Virus record (IMG/VR): IMGVR_UViG_3300032315_001715
Coordinates: 388,800 to 452,799 of that record
DNA: 64,000 nucleotides
Strand: one strand, 5' to 3'
The translations under genes and the position numbers were made by a program. The notes under the pieces are model-generated. The model was not told the origin of the DNA and did not search any database. It worked only from the letters and a program-made list of their open reading frames with translations. Positions 5,700-23,847 of this stretch are shown here, one piece after another; position 1 is the stretch's first letter; each line of letters begins with the position of its first letter.

Positions 5700-7190
5700 T
5701 CATATGCTATCAAGAAGTTGATTGTATTGCGTAACAAAAACCGCATGTCTATTTTTAATTTCCTCGGCGACGAACACATACTGTCCTGGTCTCTGTTGCG
5801 TTTTGTCAAAATCGGTTAATTTATAGCCTAGGCTCATTAGTGCTAATATATCCCAGCTTTTCAACCATGCGTTGTGTTTGTTCAACATTGGAGTTAGGAT
5901 ATTGATGTTGAATTCACTAGCTTCTTGTTGTGTCCAATAATCAGTTTCCCACATATCAATGTTGTCGTTAGGGAACCGAAATCCATACTTGGCATGGTTA
6001 CGTTCAAATTCGCTATGATTGCCTATCTTTCTATTGATGTTAAGGGTTTGCATGACCGCACTATACAGATCATTTTGTGCAAACCAGTACACGGTATCCA
6101 CGAGACTTTCTTTTGTATCTCCAGGGAGACCAACAATGAAACTGAGATGCTGGAGCACCTTCTTGCCCCAGATATCATGATAAAGCGTTGGGATCCACTC
6201 CCTGGCATGTTTTCCTGACCAGCCTTTTCCGACTATTTGGCTGGCTTCCACGCCGAGGCTTTCTATACCATGGTATGCAGTAGCTAGCCCGGTCTCTTTT
6301 AAAAGGTACGGAACATCCTGGAATCGATGTAGAAGATCAGCCCTTAGGTATGCGGTGTATTGTATCTTGAACGGCAATCGACTGACCATGCTGTGCCAGG
6401 CTTTCATCTTGGTTTCGGTATCATTAAATGTGTCGCAGATTACAAAATAGTTGGTGATACCCCACTTGGCGTGATTATGGCACATTTCGGCCTCCACGCA
6501 CTCGAAACTTCTCAGATAATCCAGTTTGCCTCTGCCCAACAGCAAATGATTGCAGAATTTGCAGCTGAATATGCAACCTCTGCTAATTTCGATCGGGAGG
6601 GTCTCTCCTGGAATGATGCAATCCTGATCAGTAAACAGATGATTGTCGGATTGTATGTTGTGCTTGATCGATAACGGTCTGAGATATGTTTTTCTTTTGT
6701 ATGTTGGATCATATCCTGTGGGCCGCATTTCGAACGGAGGCTCAGGAGTACCTTTCTTTAGATGGTTGATCACATCTACAAATATGTCTTCTCCGTACTG
6801 ATTCACGCTGGCATCAGCTACGGCTGATCTAGCAACAGCATCGCTCTGATATCCGCCTAAAATGATCATTATCGTTGGATGCTCTGCCTTGATCCTATTT
6901 AGAACCCTGTAAAGATGATAAGGTATCCTAGCTCGAGTTCCGTCGGGCCAGTACCACCACCGTTGGCAAAGAAATGTGGTGCTGATTGCCAGCACCACGG
7001 TGTCGTTGTTTATAAACTTGCAGGTTATCTGGTATAGTCGGTCCTCGTCCATGCTTGTAATAAAATCTATCACCTGGACCTGATAACCAGCGGTTCGGCA
7101 TGAATGTGCGATCTTATAAGGACCTAGATATCGATAAGGCACATAGTGATCGTCAACGGTCTGACCGCTGGTCCAGATGATAACATCCAT
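5700..7190 (-). CDS. B12-binding-domain radical SAM protein
   Basis: EISRGCIFSCKFC (CxxxCxxC), N-terminal cobalamin-binding-like region, FIVGLPGDT. Confidence 0.85.
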   Translation of the reverse strand: MDVIIWTSGQTVDDHYVPYRYLGPYKIAHSCRTAGYQVQVIDFITSMDEDRLYQITCKFINNDTVVLAISTTFLCQRWWYWPDGTRARIPYHLYRVLNRIKAEHPTIMIILGGYQSDAVARSAVADASVNQYGEDIFVDVINHLKKGTPEPPFEMRPTGYDPTYKRKTYLRPLSIKHNIQSDNHLFTDQDCIIPGETLPIEISRGCIFSCKFCNHLLLGRGKLDYLRSFECVEAEMCHNHAKWGITNYFVICDTFNDTETKMKAWHSMVSRLPFKIQYTAYLRADLLHRFQDVPYLLKETGLATAYHGIESLGVEASQIVGKGWSGKHAREWIPTLYHDIWGKKVLQHLSFIVGLPGDTKESLVDTVYWFAQNDLYSAVMQTLNINRKIGNHSEFERNHAKYGFRFPNDNIDMWETDYWTQQEASEFNINILTPMLNKHNAWLKSWDILALMSLGYKLTDFDKTQQRPGQYVFVAEEIKNRHAVFVTQYNQLLDSI

Positions 7191-7777: not shown

Positions 7778-9262
7778 TCATGCGACCGAATTCAGCAGGG
7801 TTGTGTAGGTTTTCATGTACGAGCTCGCAATGTTATTGGTCATCTTGGAATATTCGGTCCTGCCGATGGATCGCAGATTGTTCTTGTCAAAAAATTCATG
7901 ATTGTGTCCACGTCCCATTAGGTTTGCGACATCCCACGGGCTACATGTTAGATCCTTCCCGAGCTGTTCCAGCCGAGGTTTAAACTCATCGGCAACAAAC
8001 TTGATGGCATCCTTGCGATGCCAATTAGGCAAATGCCAAACGGTCCTGTCATCGTCTGGAAATGTGTATCCATGTTTTTCAAGCTCGAAGCTTAGCCTGC
8101 TAGGAGAAAGCATGTCCTTGGCCAACCACAACGGTGCTATACCGATGTGATACAGATCATTTTCCATGAACCAGTCGGCCCACGTTAGTATGTCTTCCTT
8201 GGTATCTCCAGGCAAGCCTGCTATGAATCCGACCTGTTGTCGGATCTGTCCTTTCCATATATCATGATATAAGTGTGGGATGTAAGTTCGAGCGTGCTTA
8301 CCACTCCAGCCCTTACCGACTGCCATCGATGCTTCAAGCCCCAGGCTTTCGATGCCATGATATGTGGATACCAGCCCGGATTCTTGCAGCATTATCGGAA
8401 CGTCGGGCATGCTTTGTAATAGATCGGCCCTGAGGAATGCTGCATATCGTATCTTGAACGGCAAAGACATTACCATTTCGTGCCAGGCTTGCATTTTTAT
8501 CATGGTGTCATTAAAGGTATCGCATATTATGACGTAGCTTGTTGTTTGCCATTTTTCATGATTATATAGGAGTTCTTGCTTGATCATTTCCATGCTGCGA
8601 AGGTAATCAAGTTTCTTTCTCCCGAGTAATGGATGGTTGCAAAACTTGCAGCTGAATATGCACCCCCGGCTGACCTCCAAGGGCAAGGTTTCTTTTGGTA
8701 ATATAGCATCATGCTCAGTAAATCGAAAATCATCGCATTCTATGTTGTACCTTACCTGATTTGGTTTTTTCCAAGAGATTCTCGACGATACGGTTTCTCT
8801 GATACCGACTGGGGCCGGCGTACCGAGCTTGAGATGCTCAAGGAGGTCTAGGAATATGTCCTCAGCGTATTCCTTGATGCTGCTATCAACGATACCCCAA
8901 TCCGGAAGCCAATTTGAGTTGAATCCTCCGATGATCACGTGTATCAATGGGTAATGAGACTTTATCACACGCATCGCTAAGTAAACATGATATGGAAGTA
9001 GGTGTTTTTGGCCGTCAGGCCATTGGTGCATTCTTTGCGATATGAATGTTGCACTTAGACCGAGTATCTTGGTGCTCGGGGTGATGAATCGATTAATGGA
9101 TGCTATTAGTTGGTTAGGTTCCATTCGAGCAACATGATCGATGATCTGAATGGTATGTCCGTGTTTTCTAACGAAATGGGCCAGCTTGTATGGCCCTATG
9201 TATCGATGTATTATTCCCGGTACATCGCCTTCAGCACCATTCGATAGTATGATTGCATCCAT
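7778..9262 (-). CDS. B12-binding-domain radical SAM protein, paralogue of 5700..7190
   Basis: EVSRGCIFSCKFC; collinear similarity to the 496-aa copy. Confidence 0.85.
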   Translation of the reverse strand: MDAIILSNGAEGDVPGIIHRYIGPYKLAHFVRKHGHTIQIIDHVARMEPNQLIASINRFITPSTKILGLSATFISQRMHQWPDGQKHLLPYHVYLAMRVIKSHYPLIHVIIGGFNSNWLPDWGIVDSSIKEYAEDIFLDLLEHLKLGTPAPVGIRETVSSRISWKKPNQVRYNIECDDFRFTEHDAILPKETLPLEVSRGCIFSCKFCNHPLLGRKKLDYLRSMEMIKQELLYNHEKWQTTSYVIICDTFNDTMIKMQAWHEMVMSLPFKIRYAAFLRADLLQSMPDVPIMLQESGLVSTYHGIESLGLEASMAVGKGWSGKHARTYIPHLYHDIWKGQIRQQVGFIAGLPGDTKEDILTWADWFMENDLYHIGIAPLWLAKDMLSPSRLSFELEKHGYTFPDDDRTVWHLPNWHRKDAIKFVADEFKPRLEQLGKDLTCSPWDVANLMGRGHNHEFFDKNNLRSIGRTEYSKMTNNIASSYMKTYTTLLNSVA

Positions 9263-11944: not shown

Positions 11945-12114
11945 TGGTGCCGGATGAGGGATTTGAACCCCCGACCTTCGGTTTTTCTTGGACTTGCGGG
12001 CTTTAGGCCTTCTGTCCTTCATGGACGTACACAGAAGTAAATTCTCTGCACGGCTCCTGAGATGTTACCCATCACGGAAACAAAACCGCTGCACTACCAC
12101 TGTGCTAACCCGGC
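11945..12114 (-). tRNA. tRNA-Thr(TGT) interrupted by a 95-nt insert (11985..12079)
   Basis: 35-nt 5' part ending GCGGT TTTGT and 40-nt 3' part starting AAACCGA join to a canonical 75-nt cloverleaf. Confidence 0.85.
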
Positions 12115-14589: not shown

Positions 14590-14707
14590 TGGCTCCTTCT
14601 GCTGGACTCGAACCAGCAACCACCTGATTAATCTTGGACCTGATGGAGTTGCACCATCCAATCTATTGATCCCACAGTCAGGGGCTCTACCATTGAGCTA
14701 AGAAGGA
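14590..14707 (-). tRNA. tRNA-Asn(GTT) interrupted by a 43-nt insert (14631..14673)
   Basis: CCTGA CTGT | TAA TCAGG restores a canonical arm; U1-A72, G73. Confidence 0.85.
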
Positions 14708-19206: not shown

Positions 19207-19281
19207 TGGTCTCGCGTGCGGGTGCCGGCCCCGCTACTCCGGGATGAAAGCCCGGTGTTTTAGCTGGTAAACTAACGCGAG
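19207..19281 (-). tRNA. tRNA-Glu(TTC), T-loop GCCGGCA
   Basis: CCGGG CTTTCAT CCCGG; ACCA. Confidence 0.8.
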
Positions 19282-21306: not shown

Positions 21307-21427
21307 GTGGTATAATGGCCTTAGAACACTCCGCCGGTGCTGCCCTAACCCTTGTTTGCGCTCAAGTCCCCGGTCTACGGCTGCATCTCAACCAGGGAGG
21401 GCTATCTGCTCTCGTCGTGCTCTAACT

Positions 21428-21502
21428 TGGTCTCGCGTGCGGGTGCCGGCCCCGCTACTCCGGGATGAAAGCCCAGTATTTTAGCTGGTAAACTAACGCG
21501 AG
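21428..21502 (-). tRNA. tRNA-Glu(TTC), duplicate of 19207..19281
   Basis: Two differences, both leave G:U pairs. Confidence 0.8.
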
Positions 21503-21518
21503 AAATCTCATTCTAACT

Positions 21519-21598
21519 TGGAGGACCACCAGGGAATCGAACCCTGCTTGTTGCTGCTTCCGCGGTGGGTTTTAGCGCAACAAGAGCCATCGTGGCCC
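21519..21598 (-). ncRNA. tRNA-like RNA lacking D-arm and anticodon loop
   Basis: Acceptor GGGCCAC/GTGGTCC-TCCA, T-arm CAGGG TTCGATT CCCTG, 8-bp stem CTTGTTGC/GCAACAAG around 22 nt. Confidence 0.65.
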
Positions 21599-21608
21599 GT
21601 AAATTTGG

Positions 21609-21616
21609 TATAAATA
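21609..21616 (+). promoter_or_regulatory. T4-like late promoter TATAAATA
   Basis: ggTATAAATAg upstream of the only plus-strand gene in the array. Confidence 0.7.
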
Positions 21617-21652
21617 GATTAAATAGTTTTTTAAGCAACAGGAGAATGTCGC

Positions 21653-22282
21653 ATGTCTTATGAAATTTTCATTAAAAGTCAGTCATACACTCGACAATCA
21701 CCTAATCTTTCTAAGCTTGGGTTTGATTTTGTAAACCATGATAGCAAAGCTGAATATCAAAAAATTCAGAACCTTCTTAGCACTGAATATTTAATTCTTG
21801 GCGAAAGTATGATAACCTTGCAAGAAAAATACAGCATCCCAAGTTCACGGACCTTACATGATTTGTTCAAACTATTTGATATTGAAGCACGATCATTTAG
21901 TAATGCTAATAGGTTAGCATTGACAACGGAGCGATCCACAATGCCGTGTTGTTACAAATACAAGACAGGATGGCATACAACTTGGGATCAAAAACAAGTC
22001 TTCTTGCGAAGTTCGTATGAATTTGATTATGCGAAAATTCTCGATGAGTCAAAAATACCGTATGAGGTGGAAGCACTTCGAATCAAATACTATTCCTCAA
22101 CCGAGGAGAAATATCGTATAGCTATACCCGATTTTTTACTACCTTGCAGTCATACCATAGTTGAGATCAAATCTCAATTTACCTACGATAGTCAACAAAT
22201 GAAAGACAAGTTCTGTGCATATCAAGCACTCGGATATAAAGCGATTTTGATTCTAGAGGGCAAAGAAACCTCTCTAGAATGA
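21653..22282 (+). CDS. Free-standing endonuclease (TnsA-N-like PD-(D/E)xK)
   Basis: LRSSYEFDYAKILD..YE..IPDF..IVEIKS; inverted relative to the array. Confidence 0.7.
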   Translation: MSYEIFIKSQSYTRQSPNLSKLGFDFVNHDSKAEYQKIQNLLSTEYLILGESMITLQEKYSIPSSRTLHDLFKLFDIEARSFSNANRLALTTERSTMPCCYKYKTGWHTTWDQKQVFLRSSYEFDYAKILDESKIPYEVEALRIKYYSSTEEKYRIAIPDFLLPCSHTIVEIKSQFTYDSQQMKDKFCAYQALGYKAILILEGKETSLE

Positions 22283-22285
22283 AGT

Positions 22286-22419
22286 TGGAGGACCCCGGTG
22301 GTAACGATCCACTTGCGGGCGGGTTAATCTTGGCATAGAGGACTTGCACCTCATGTGACCTGGTTGTCATCTGCCTAAAGTCCGCTGCCGGCACCTGCCT
22401 GGCTATACGCTCGGGGTCC
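22286..22419 (-). tRNA. tRNA-Lys(TTT), 8/4-type body, interrupted by a 50-nt insert (22327..22376)
   Basis: GGACCCCG/CGGGGTCC-TCCA; GCGGA CTTT | TAA CCCGC; T-arm GTGG ATCGTTA CCAC. Confidence 0.7.
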
Positions 22420-22468
22420 TTGTTATCTATTGTTTAATGGGATTTCCTTGGTAATGCAAGGAAAAACT

Positions 22469-22541
22469 TGGAGGACCGTGTGGGAATCAAACCTTCCCGG
22501 CCGGATTAAGAGCCCAGCTGAGCCTCAGGCTGCAATGGTCC
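22469..22541 (-). tRNA. Atypical tRNA-Lys(CTT): 6-bp anticodon stem, 3-nt variable loop, U73
   Basis: GCTGGG CTCTTAA TCCGGC; small D-arm; weak T-stem. Confidence 0.6.
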
Positions 22542-23695: not shown

Positions 23696-23772
23696 TGGTG
23701 GACGCGTCTGGATTCGAACCAGATGGGGTAGCGAACCCCGTCGCCATAGCTTGATACCTACCAAGGAAGCCC
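23696..23772 (-). ncRNA. tRNA-like RNA (possible degenerate Ala-CGC)
   Basis: Perfect T-arm and ACCA, G3:U70, hairpin GGGG TTCGCTA CCCC, poor acceptor pairing. Confidence 0.5.
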
Positions 23773-23776
23773 ATAT

Positions 23777-23847
23777 TGGTGGACCCGACGGGAATCGAAC
23801 CCGCCTGCATCACGCCCGTGATTGGCTTAGCGTTTTACCCCATGTCC
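23777..23847 (-). ncRNA. tRNA-like RNA with 4-nt loop in place of anticodon
   Basis: GGACATG/CGGGTCC-ACCA, T-arm GCGGG TTCGATT CCCGT, ATCAC-GGGC-GTGAT. Confidence 0.5.

What the first reader, a model, noticed from the sequence alone, without database searches (positions are those of the whole stretch)
21519..21598. D-armless, anticodon-less mini RNA with G3:U70
Seen: perfect acceptor (GGGCCAC/GTGGTCC, G3:U70), perfect T-arm, 7-nt linker in place of D-arm, 8-bp stem around 22 nt. Known: this matches the tmRNA tRNA-like domain layout and G3:U70 is the AlaRS determinant, but U73 differs and there is no tag ORF. It shares GGxCC...GGTCC-TCCA with the two odd Lys tRNAs across the inverted endonuclease.
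Basis: partly seen in the sequence, partly recalled or inferred. Interest (0 to 1): 0.6.

Follow-up and report, generated by a model that had tools for sequence, protein, structure and literature searches.

The report
Tag-less tmRNA-like mini RNA in phage
An 80-base gene in the tRNA cluster of a 453-kb phage encodes a tRNA-shaped RNA with no anticodon; it is best read as a stripped-down, tag-less relative of the ribosome-rescue RNA tmRNA, a kind already known from one mycobacteriophage, so it is an unusual variant and not a new class.

Summary
On the minus strand, 21598 to 21519 folds into a perfect 7-bp acceptor stem with G3:U70, a 7-nt linker, an 8-bp stem around 22 nt, a perfect T arm, U73 and an encoded CCA. 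No tRNA or tmRNA finder calls it.

It is not a chance hairpin. Covariance models built from phage 'TLD-only' (tag-less) tmRNAs, without the candidate, score it at 42.6 and 47.8 bits. tRNAs in four huge-phage genomes reach at most 34 bits. Its apical loop motif recurs in the published TLD-only RNA of mycobacteriophage DS6A and in Streptomyces phage LuckySocke.

A freshwater relative keeps the gene with only mild changes, including A73, and lacks the neighbouring homing-endonuclease cassette. An unrelated phage (L048) carries a copy with the identical acceptor stem and its own terminator.

It fails Rfam's tmRNA model. It also lacks the UCGAC/GGAC neck that SmpB grips, and the phage has its own full two-piece tmRNA but no SmpB or AlaRS.

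Best reading: a divergent tag-less tmRNA derivative, processed like a tRNA and probably alanylated. It may modulate trans-translation, or it may have taken on an SmpB-independent role. Expression and charging are untested.

Novelty: new variant of a known kind.

The parts
21519..21598 (-). Mini tRNA-like RNA gene, 80 nt including the encoded CCA
   Evidence: Sequence read. Fold. Covariance model hits of 42.6 bits (R1) and 47.8 bits (R2).
21592..21598 (-). Acceptor stem 5' strand GGGCCAC (G3 at 21596)
   Evidence: Pairs perfectly with 21523-21529. Identical to the acceptor of L048. The first five pairs are identical to those of the phage's own tmRNA.
21585..21591 (-). 7-nt linker GATGGCT in place of a D arm. 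Its GG aligns with the conserved ATGG of the tmRNA D-loop analogue.
   Evidence: Alignment A5. The motif ATGG also occurs in DS6A, which was found independently of my search pattern.
21547..21584 (-). Helix-2a-like hairpin: an 8-bp stem (21577-21584 with 21547-21554) around 22 nt. The loop carries the motif AAAACC..GCGG.
   Evidence: Fold. All 8 pairs of this helix covary across the family. The loop motif is shared with DS6A and LuckySocke.
21530..21546 (-). T arm: CAGGG, TTCGATT, CCCTG
   Evidence: In the freshwater relative the loop reads TTCAATT, a purine-to-purine change at position 57.
21519..21529 (-). Acceptor 3' strand GTGGTCC (U70 at 21525), discriminator U73 (21522) and encoded CCA (21519-21521)
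   Evidence: The relative has A73, and A at position 69.
21599..22280 (+). Homing-endonuclease cassette inserted exactly at the 5' end of the mini RNA gene (ORF 21653-22282, 209 aa). It is not part of the RNA but explains the gene's isolation from the upstream RNAs.
   Evidence: A contig of a freshwater metagenome joins 21598 directly to 22281. The ORF has a weak DUF7487 match.
21428..21502 (-). Next gene downstream: tRNA-Glu(UUC) with an aberrant T loop, 16 nt after the mini RNA's CCA
   Evidence: Rfam tRNA 39.1 bits. ARAGORN in relaxed mode. A duplicate lies at 19207-19281.
22283..22541 (-). Two upstream Lys-like RNAs that end in GGTCC-T-CCA: 22469-22541, Lys(CUU)-like; and about 22286-22420, a 135-nt RNA with an insert in the anticodon region

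Best explanation
The 80-nt gene encodes a stable tRNA-like small RNA that descends from the tRNA-like domain of tmRNA. It has lost the whole messenger part (pseudoknots, resume codon, tag frame), like the 'TLD-only' RNA of mycobacteriophage DS6A.

Inferred steps, none of them shown:
1. It is transcribed with the minus-strand tRNA array.
2. RNase P cuts it at G1 and it is trimmed to its encoded CCA.
3. The acceptor stem stacks on the T arm, the GG of the 7-nt linker docks on the T loop, and the long hairpin projects like tmRNA helix 2.
4. The host AlaRS probably charges it with alanine through G3:U70.
5. Because it can neither decode nor template a tag, its likely effect is to compete with full-length tmRNA, host or phage, for AlaRS, EF-Tu or stalled ribosomes, and so tune trans-translation during infection.

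This variant has replaced the non-Watson-Crick GA-GA neck that SmpB binds with plain base pairs. It may therefore act without SmpB, or more weakly than the DS6A type.
For: Structure:
- Perfect helices and a canonical T loop.

Family membership:
- R1 was built from 7 tag-less phage tmRNAs, four of which pass Rfam tmRNA at 52-65 bits. It scores the candidate at 42.6 bits, against at most 24.3 for the window's tRNAs.
- R2 has 15 seeds, including DS6A and LuckySocke, which do not fit my search pattern. It gives 47.8 bits, against at most 33.9 bits over 1.84 Mb of four tRNA-rich huge phages.
- On R1, DS6A itself scores 45.7 bits, about the same as the candidate.
- The family structure covaries: 95% of cells paired, 15 of 20 pairs with compensatory changes, 0 of 500 shuffles as good, and G3:U70 in 16 of 17 members.
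- The apical motif AAAACC..GCGG is shared with DS6A and LuckySocke.

Links to the phage's own tmRNA:
- The 3' half resembles the acceptor piece of the phage's two-piece tmRNA. The first five acceptor pairs are the same, and AACAAG sits next to the T stem in both.

Gene-like context:
- In the relative that lacks the endonuclease cassette, the gene starts 5 nt after the previous CCA.
- LuckySocke's copy also lies inside a tRNA array.
- L048's copy has its own terminator.
- The relative's changes are A73, R57 and one acceptor position. The apical loop and the 3' strand of the helix (RNA positions 31-52) are unchanged; one further difference is unlisted and must lie near an end of the aligned piece.

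Published background:
- DS6A's RNA is TLD-only, and a similar molecule inhibits tmRNA in E. coli (PMC4131195; PMC11915505).
Against: - Rfam RF00023, the mitochondrial tmRNA model and the permuted tmRNA models give no match at E up to 10.
- The linker is 7 nt, against 10-13 nt in tmRNAs (PMC1168896).
- The GA-GA neck and the equivalents of A15, U17, C18, G19 and A334, which hold SmpB (PMC8363625), are absent.
- U73 replaces the usual A73.
- The seeds of my models were first found with a pattern derived from the candidate, so the scores are partly circular.
- The loop similarity alone is weak: shuffle p = 0.13 for the loop and 0.009 for the whole interior.
- The similarity to the phage's own tmRNA piece has p of about 0.04.
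- The phage already has a complete tmRNA and no SmpB or AlaRS, so a decoy would also hit its own tmRNA.
- G3:U70 with U73 also occurs on tRNAs with Lys and Arg anticodons.
- No RNA data exist.
Confidence: 0.45

Rival explanations
1. Decaying relic. It is a remnant of a tmRNA or tRNA gene that is still cut out of the precursor because it keeps an acceptor/T minihelix, but has no function of its own.
For: The array holds several degenerate tRNA-likes: 23696-23772, Ala(CGC)-like with two acceptor mismatches; 23777-23847; and the Glu(UUC) genes with an odd T loop. The SmpB neck is lost. The only close relative is about 96% identical over the gene, no better than the flanking block.
Against: All 20 pairs are perfect and the T loop is canonical. 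The relative's three substitutions fall on tolerant positions. An unrelated phage keeps the identical acceptor stem, U73 and CCA with a different interior and its own terminator.
Confidence: 0.2
2. A Lys-type acceptor arm turned decoy. The gene arose from the phage tRNA-Lys lineage (GGACC...GGTCC-U73-CCA) by loss of the D and anticodon arms. It acts as a bait or competitor for a factor that reads the acceptor/T half of tRNA, for example a host defence enzyme or toxin acting on tRNA 3' ends, or a phage repair or CCA enzyme.
For: The 3' end GGTCC-T-CCA is typical of phage tRNA-Lys (33 of 48 distinct viral sequences). The two nearest upstream genes are Lys-like with the same end. Only A3 to G3 separates the acceptor types. 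The phage has two CCA/poly(A)-type nucleotidyltransferases.
Against: The interior matches tag-less tmRNAs, not tRNA-Lys. The relative has A73. The first five acceptor pairs equal those of the phage's own tmRNA. No partner protein has been identified.
Confidence: 0.12
3. An SmpB-independent alanine carrier. It is charged by AlaRS and used off the decoding path, as an Ala donor for a transferase or as a sink that alters Ala-tRNA or EF-Tu pools.
For: G3:U70 is conserved. There is no anticodon and no SmpB neck. tRNA genes with Ala anticodons carry the same GGGCC..GGTCC-U73-CCA ends in metagenomes and in a Rickettsiales MAG.
Against: No candidate transferase was found or sought systematically. This is pure inference from identity rules. 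The same acceptor type also occurs with Lys and Arg anticodons.
Confidence: 0.1
4. A processing or punctuation element. It is a tRNA-shaped module whose only role is to direct RNase P and 3' trimming, or to stabilise the polycistronic precursor next to the endonuclease insertion site.
For: It lies in a dense array with 5-16 nt spacers. It has the minimal RNase P substrate shape.
Against: Neighbouring genes are themselves tRNA-shaped and need no extra signal. The conserved G3:U70, apical motif and encoded CCA are not needed for punctuation. The L048 copy stands alone with a terminator.
Confidence: 0.08

Closest known systems
TLD-only (CDS-less) tmRNA of mycobacteriophage DS6A (Mao et al. 2009, as cited in PMC4131195 and PMC11915505). 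The unannotated copies I found in Streptomyces phages LuckySocke, GiJojo and pSt2308 and in about 25 IMG/VR contigs belong with it.
   Same: About 80 nt. Acceptor with G3:U70, a D-loop analogue containing ATGG, one long hairpin, a T arm, and no pseudoknots or tag frame. Apical motif AAAACC..GCGG. Often inside phage tRNA arrays. Similar score on model R1 (DS6A 45.7 bits, candidate 42.6).
   Different: The candidate has a 7-nt linker instead of 12-14 nt. It has no UCGAC/GGAC (GA-GA) neck, U73 instead of A73, and a fully encoded CCA. It fails RF00023, whereas the DS6A type scores 43-65 bits. It also coexists with a full tmRNA gene in the same genome.
tRNA-like domain of standard and two-piece tmRNA (Rfam RF00023, RF04321), including the phage's own gene at G000 111695-112033
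   Same: G1-C72, G2-C71 and G3:U70. T arm. The GG of the D-loop analogue. A helix 2a leaving the elbow. The first five acceptor pairs and AACAAG next to the T stem match the phage's own tmRNA.
   Different: No mRNA-like domain, no pseudoknots, no tandem G-A pairs, a shorter linker, and U73. It is not detected by any Rfam tmRNA model.
CDS-less organellar tmRNAs: jakobid mitochondria (Jacob et al. 2004) and roughly 65-bp plastid forms (PMC11915505)
   Same: Reduction of tmRNA to little more than the tRNA-like domain.
   Different: The mitochondrial forms co-occur with a nucleus-encoded, mitochondrion-targeted SmpB (PMC11915505). Here there is no phage SmpB and no SmpB-binding neck. No Rfam mt-tmRNA match.
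tRNA-Ala and the alanine minihelix (AlaRS recognition of G3:U70; established knowledge)
   Same: G3:U70 in a G1-C72, G2-C71 context. The same GGGCC..GGTCC-U73-CCA ends occur on tRNA genes with Ala anticodons.
   Different: No D arm and no anticodon arm. Rfam tRNA and ARAGORN do not call it. R2 scores tRNA-Ala genes at only 32-33 bits, against 47.8 for the candidate.
Phage tRNA-Lys genes with a GGACC...GGTCC-U73-CCA acceptor
   Same: Positions 1, 2, 4 and 5, U73 and CCA are the same. Two such Lys-like genes lie just upstream.
   Different: A3:U70 in those genes against G3:U70 here. They have D and anticodon arms.
mascRNA (Rfam RF01684) and D-armless mitochondrial tRNAs
   Same: Small tRNA-shaped RNAs that are processed like tRNAs without a normal cloverleaf. 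There is a weak Rfam match to mascRNA (17 bits).
   Different: The mascRNA match is at chance level (E = 2.5). ARAGORN's mitochondrial and D-armless modes do not call the candidate, and it has no 7-nt anticodon loop.

Membership tests
tmRNA (Rfam RF00023 and permuted models) | Match to the curated covariance model at or above the gathering score (47 bits) | tested here: not met
   No match at E up to 10 in the region scan or in the whole-genome scan. The phage's own tRNA-Ala reaches 25 bits there, and the candidate is not listed at all.
tmRNA tRNA-like domain | Acceptor stem with G3:U70 | tested here: met
   GGGCCAC pairs with GTGGTCC. G:U is kept in 16 of 17 family sequences.
tmRNA tRNA-like domain | Discriminator A73 followed by CCA | tested here: inconclusive
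   U73 in this genome and in L048. A73 in the freshwater relative. CCA is encoded.
tmRNA tRNA-like domain | Single-stranded D-loop analogue of 10-13 nt ending in UCGAC, with tandem G-A pairs (19-GA-20 with 333-GA-334) forming the SmpB site | tested here: not met
   The linker is 7 nt. The neck is Watson-Crick CTTG/CAAG. The feature is defined in PMC1168896 and PMC8363625.
tmRNA | mRNA-like domain with a resume codon and a tag frame ending in a stop | tested here: not met
   There are only 22 nt between the strands of the hairpin. ARAGORN finds no tag.
Phage TLD-only (CDS-less) tmRNA, DS6A type | An RNA of about 80 nt with acceptor (G3:U70), D-loop analogue, a single hairpin and a T arm, scoring with a family covariance model above the tRNA background | tested here: met
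   R1 42.6 bits and R2 47.8 bits. tRNA background is at most 33.9 bits. DS6A scores 45.7 bits on R1. Caveat: the seeds were first found with a pattern derived from the candidate.
Phage TLD-only (CDS-less) tmRNA, DS6A type | Conserved apical loop motif (AAA-CCGC-N-GCGG/GCGA) | tested here: inconclusive
   The motif is present in a variant form and at the same structural position. The shuffle test gives p = 0.009 for the interior and 0.13 for the loop alone.
Phage TLD-only (CDS-less) tmRNA, DS6A type | Binds SmpB and inhibits trans-translation | not testable with these tools
   Known only for a DS6A-like molecule in E. coli (PMC4131195, PMC11915505). The SmpB-contact nucleotides are missing here.
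tRNA (Rfam RF00005, ARAGORN) | Cloverleaf with a D arm and an anticodon arm carrying a 7-nt loop | tested here: not met
   Not called by Rfam at E up to 10. Not called by ARAGORN in default, -ps80, intron, mitochondrial or D-armless modes.
Alanine-accepting RNAs (AlaRS substrates) | Aminoacylation with alanine | not testable with these tools
   G3:U70 is present. The phage has no AlaRS. There are no RNA or charging data.
Expressed small RNA gene | A transcript with defined ends | not testable with these tools
   No RNA run holds the locus. No consensus promoter was found. The L048 homologue has an intrinsic terminator.

The most novel reading that the evidence does not exclude
The candidate and its L048 counterpart form a distinct subclass. 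They share an identical acceptor stem, U73 and an encoded CCA, and neither has the GA-GA neck. On this reading the subclass has left the SmpB pathway altogether. These would be alanine-accepting, anticodon-less RNAs that phages use for a new purpose. Two examples are baiting a host defence enzyme that attacks tRNA acceptor ends, or feeding alanine to a non-ribosomal reaction. They would sit beside a normal phage tmRNA.
Probability: 0.12. Interest if true: 0.75.

Novelty: new variant of a known kind. Interest (0 to 1): 0.45.

Why it matters
Tag-less tmRNA had been reported in phages only for DS6A. This work shows that such RNAs are widespread and unannotated. They occur in about 25 IMG/VR contigs and in cultured Streptomyces phages, often inside tRNA arrays.

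A huge phage that already has a complete two-piece tmRNA also keeps a further-reduced form, and that form lacks the SmpB site. If the RNA is expressed and charged, it gives a natural minimal substrate for three questions:
- What does a tRNA-like domain do on its own in infection?
- How do phages manipulate ribosome rescue?
- Which parts of the domain are needed for AlaRS, EF-Tu and SmpB?

For annotation, it shows that tRNA and tmRNA finders miss this class.

Tried and rejected
- **Hidden tRNA.** ARAGORN in relaxed, intron, mitochondrial and D-armless modes, and Rfam tRNA, give no call.
- **Standard tmRNA.** No Rfam match.
- **Close relatives by DNA.**
  - blastn against 50,697 phage records found only T-arm matches to tRNA-Ala genes.
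  - The exact apical 21-mer occurs only in L017, a 100% identical fragment of the same phage, and in no bacterial genome.
  - The acceptor-only pattern gave mostly chance coding hits.
  - The A57 T-loop pattern gave no closer relative.
  - The metagenome and genome scans for GGGCC..GGTCC-T-CCA returned real or odd tRNAs, not minis.
- **Orthologues in other huge phages.** Genomes of 393, 456 and 543 kb have none above the tRNA background.
- **Antisense role of the apical loop.** No complementary site beyond chance in the phage genome.
- **Promoter in front of the gene.** No consensus site. The AT-rich stretch there belongs to the endonuclease cassette, which is absent in the relative.
- **Phage partner proteins.** No SmpB, AlaRS or RF-1/ArfB domain.
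- **Expression.** No RNA run holds the locus. The one read-laying run gave DNA contigs only.
- **Literature.** Mao et al. 2009 is not held.

Full report
**Setting.** The window is the last 64 kb (388800-452799) of a 452,799-bp IMG/VR virus record with 49% G+C. Its minus strand carries a dense tRNA array from about 5.2 to 25.7 kb. ARAGORN genes there and Rfam 35. Small homing-endonuclease-type ORFs are interspersed: a GIY-YIG SegE-like ORF, an endonuclease-I-like ORF with NUMOD3, and a weak DUF7487 match. Elsewhere the genome has a permuted two-piece tmRNA with the tag AANDNAAFENELLAA. Rfam RF04321 scores it at 67.7 bits, above the gathering score of 47. It also has two tRNA(CUA) genes.

**The observation.**
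- a 7-bp acceptor stem, GGGCCAC with GTGGTCC, giving G3:U70;
- a 7-nt linker, GATGGCT;
- an 8-bp stem, CTTGTTGC with GCAACAAG, around 22 nt;
- no spacer before a perfect T arm, CAGGG-TTCGATT-CCCTG;
- U73 and an encoded CCA.

The minimum-free-energy fold reproduces this. It adds three more pairs on the long stem, leaving a 15-nt apical loop. No standard tool calls it. ARAGORN fails in all modes, including relaxed, intron, mitochondrial and D-armless. Rfam tRNA and every Rfam tmRNA model give nothing at E up to 10. The only Rfam match is a chance-level one to mascRNA. GGTCCTCCA occurs three times in the whole genome, all within 1 kb here.

**Relatives.** A pattern taken from the candidate's 5' end and T loop retrieved a family of about 80-nt RNAs from many IMG/VR contigs. 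Their layout is: acceptor with G3:U70, a D-loop analogue ending in TTCGAC, an 8-bp hairpin with a 15-nt loop, GGAC, a T arm, and A73. Rfam's tmRNA model matches four of them end to end, positions 1-374 with the interior deleted, at 52-65 bits. So they are tmRNA tRNA-like domains without any messenger part.

The same RNA lies unannotated in Streptomyces phages LuckySocke, GiJojo and pSt2308. In LuckySocke it sits between tRNA-Val and tRNA-Ser. It scores 57 bits on RF00023, and that phage has no other tmRNA.

The kind is published. Hudson et al. 2014 list mycobacteriophage DS6A as 'TLD only' and note that a similar molecule inhibits tmRNA, perhaps by titrating SmpB (PMC4131195). The 2025 tmRNA database paper repeats this and adds CDS-less plastid forms (PMC11915505). 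I located the DS6A RNA at JN698994 28478-28560. It scores 43.2 bits on RF00023, just under the cut-off.

**Is the candidate a member?** Model R1, built from seven family members without the candidate, scores it at 42.6 bits. That is the best hit in the window; the window's tRNAs reach at most 24.3 bits. On the same model DS6A scores 45.7 bits.

Model R2 was built from 15 members, including DS6A and LuckySocke, which do not fit my search pattern. It gives 47.8 bits. Over four tRNA-rich huge-phage genomes, 1.84 Mb in all, nothing else exceeds 33.9 bits.

On the 17-sequence alignment the three helices are paired in 95% of cells. Fifteen of the 20 pairs show compensatory changes, no shuffle out of 500 does as well, and G3:U70 is kept in 16 of 17 sequences. 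That alignment is fitted to the model, so it leans towards the structure.

The apical loop adds some independent evidence. The candidate has AAAACC-CACC-GCGG, DS6A has AAAACC-GCAC-GCGG, and LuckySocke has AAAGCC-GCAC-GCGG, all at the same structural position. A shuffle test gives p = 0.009 for the whole interior but only 0.13 for the loop alone.

The candidate's 3' half also resembles the acceptor piece of the phage's own tmRNA. The first five acceptor pairs are the same and AACAAG abuts the T stem in both; p is about 0.04.

There is a caveat. The seeds were first ascertained with a pattern derived from the candidate, so about 20 of the matching positions are built in.

**What does not fit.** tmRNAs have 10-13 single-stranded nucleotides between helices 1 and 2a, and tandem G-A pairs (19-GA-20 with 333-GA-334) at the neck (PMC1168896). 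In ribosome-bound structures SmpB holds A15, U17, C18, G19 and A334, and a G19C change abolishes binding (PMC8363625).

The candidate has a 7-nt linker and a Watson-Crick neck, CTTG with CAAG, and so lacks these contacts. The phage's own tmRNA keeps them.

L048 comes from a phage with no detectable protein similarity to this one. It has the same losses, the identical acceptor stem, U73 and an encoded CCA. Its interior is different, and an intrinsic terminator follows directly after it. These two look like a subgroup.

The phage encodes no SmpB, AlaRS or RF-1/ArfB domain, but it has two CCA/poly(A)-type nucleotidyltransferases.

**Conservation.** L017 is a 100% identical fragment of the same phage from another sample.

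A 521-nt contig from a freshwater metagenome of a different study covers 21343-21598 with six differences. It joins 21598 directly to 22281. So the 682-bp endonuclease cassette (21599-22280) is an insertion. Without it, the mini RNA starts 5 nt after the CCA of the upstream RNA, which is typical array spacing.

Within the gene the relative differs in three places:
- the discriminator, U to A, which gives the canonical A73;
- T-loop position 57, G to A;
- acceptor position 69, G to A.

The partner of position 69, at 21595, lies too near the end of the aligned piece to be reported. One of the six differences is unlisted. The apical loop and the 3' strand of the helix (RNA positions 31-52) are unchanged. 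This is mild support for constraint, because the flanking block is equally similar. The next block upstream, 22377-22493, is only about 82% identical.

**Acceptor type.** Of 48 distinct viral sequences that end in GGTCC-T-CCA after a standard T loop, ARAGORN as tRNA-Lys. The two upstream RNAs are Lys-like.

With G at position 3, the same ends occur on tRNA genes with Ala anticodons in metagenomes and in a Rickettsiales MAG. They also occur with Lys and Arg(CCU) anticodons. Seven of the nine bacterial hits are Alphaproteobacteria, which agrees with the alpha-type two-piece tmRNA as a weak hint to the host.

**Mechanism.** What is shown: the sequence, its fold, its family resemblance and its conservation in one relative. 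What is inferred: co-transcription with the array, RNase P and 3' trimming, alanylation through G3:U70, and competition with full-length tmRNA. The absence of the SmpB neck and the presence of the phage's own tmRNA weaken the simple 'SmpB sponge' model. I therefore give the combined identity-plus-function statement a confidence of 0.45. Taken separately, I put a real structured RNA gene at about 0.8, tmRNA ancestry at about 0.6, alanine charging at about 0.5, and an effect on trans-translation at about 0.3.

**Limits.** No RNA run holds the locus, no consensus promoter was found, and no antisense target of the loop exists in the phage genome. The relative's contig could not be read letter by letter.

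**Verdict.** This is a real and unusual gene: a divergent member of a known but little-noticed kind.

Noticed in passing
window 14590-14707 (-), 11945-12114 (-), about 22286-22420 (-): Three tRNA genes carry short insertions (about 43, 93 and 50 nt) in or next to the anticodon loop. The insertions share a motif: a GG-TGCAA(C/G)T-CC hairpin followed by CCAAGA(T/A)(T/A)AA. The first gene reads as tRNA-His(GUG) once the insert is removed. The inserts are too short for group I introns. They may be a family of mini-introns or retained insertions.
   Followed up: partly
window 21599-22280 (+ ORF 21653-22282): This 682-bp cassette, with a 209-aa ORF (weak DUF7487 match), is absent from a freshwater relative, whose contig joins 21598 to 22281. 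It is a free-standing homing-endonuclease-type insertion placed exactly between two RNA genes.
   Followed up: partly
window 23696-23772 (-) and 23777-23847 (-): Two tRNA-like sequences are missed by ARAGORN and Rfam. One is Ala(CGC)-like, with G3:U70 and A73 but two acceptor mismatches. The other is a 71-nt RNA with a good T arm and no clear anticodon arm (R2 30.6 bits, RF00023 20.4 bits).
   Followed up: partly
window 21428-21502 (-) and 19207-19281 (-): Duplicate tRNA-Glu(UUC) genes, 97% identical, have an aberrant T loop (GCCGGCA instead of TTCGAAT). Default ARAGORN misses both.
   Followed up: no
G000 111695-112033 (-), locus L192: The phage has its own complete permuted two-piece tmRNA (RF04321, 67.7 bits) with the tag AANDNAAFENELLAA. 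It has no SmpB gene, so it must rely on the host's SmpB.
   Followed up: yes
G000 321051-321206 (+): Two adjacent tRNA genes have the anticodon CUA, making them amber suppressors. ARAGORN labels them Pyl. This hints at TAG read-through or recoding in part of the genome. I did not apply another genetic code.
   Followed up: no
L145 (Streptomyces phage LuckySocke) 2501-2581; also GiJojo, pSt2308 and DS6A JN698994 28478-28560: Tag-less tmRNA domains in cultured actinophages are unannotated in GenBank. In GiJojo the RNA lies under a 'hypothetical protein' CDS.
   Followed up: partly
viral loci L003-L060: Many unrelated phages carry tRNA-Lys(UUU/CUU) genes with a shared unusual acceptor, GGACC...GGTCC-U73-CCA. 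Several of them have long variable regions or enlarged D arms. This may be a phage-specific tRNA-Lys type.
   Followed up: partly
L193, L195, L198, L200 (Rhizobium and Ensifer genomes) and L153: A conserved 77-nt tRNA-like gene with GGGCC...GGTCC-U-CCA ends, only about 5 acceptor pairs and an odd anticodon region. ARAGORN calls it Asn(AUU) at a relaxed threshold.
   Followed up: no
window 5700-7190 (-) and 7778-9262 (-): Two paralogous radical-SAM proteins of about 495 aa lie at the edge of the tRNA array.
   Followed up: no
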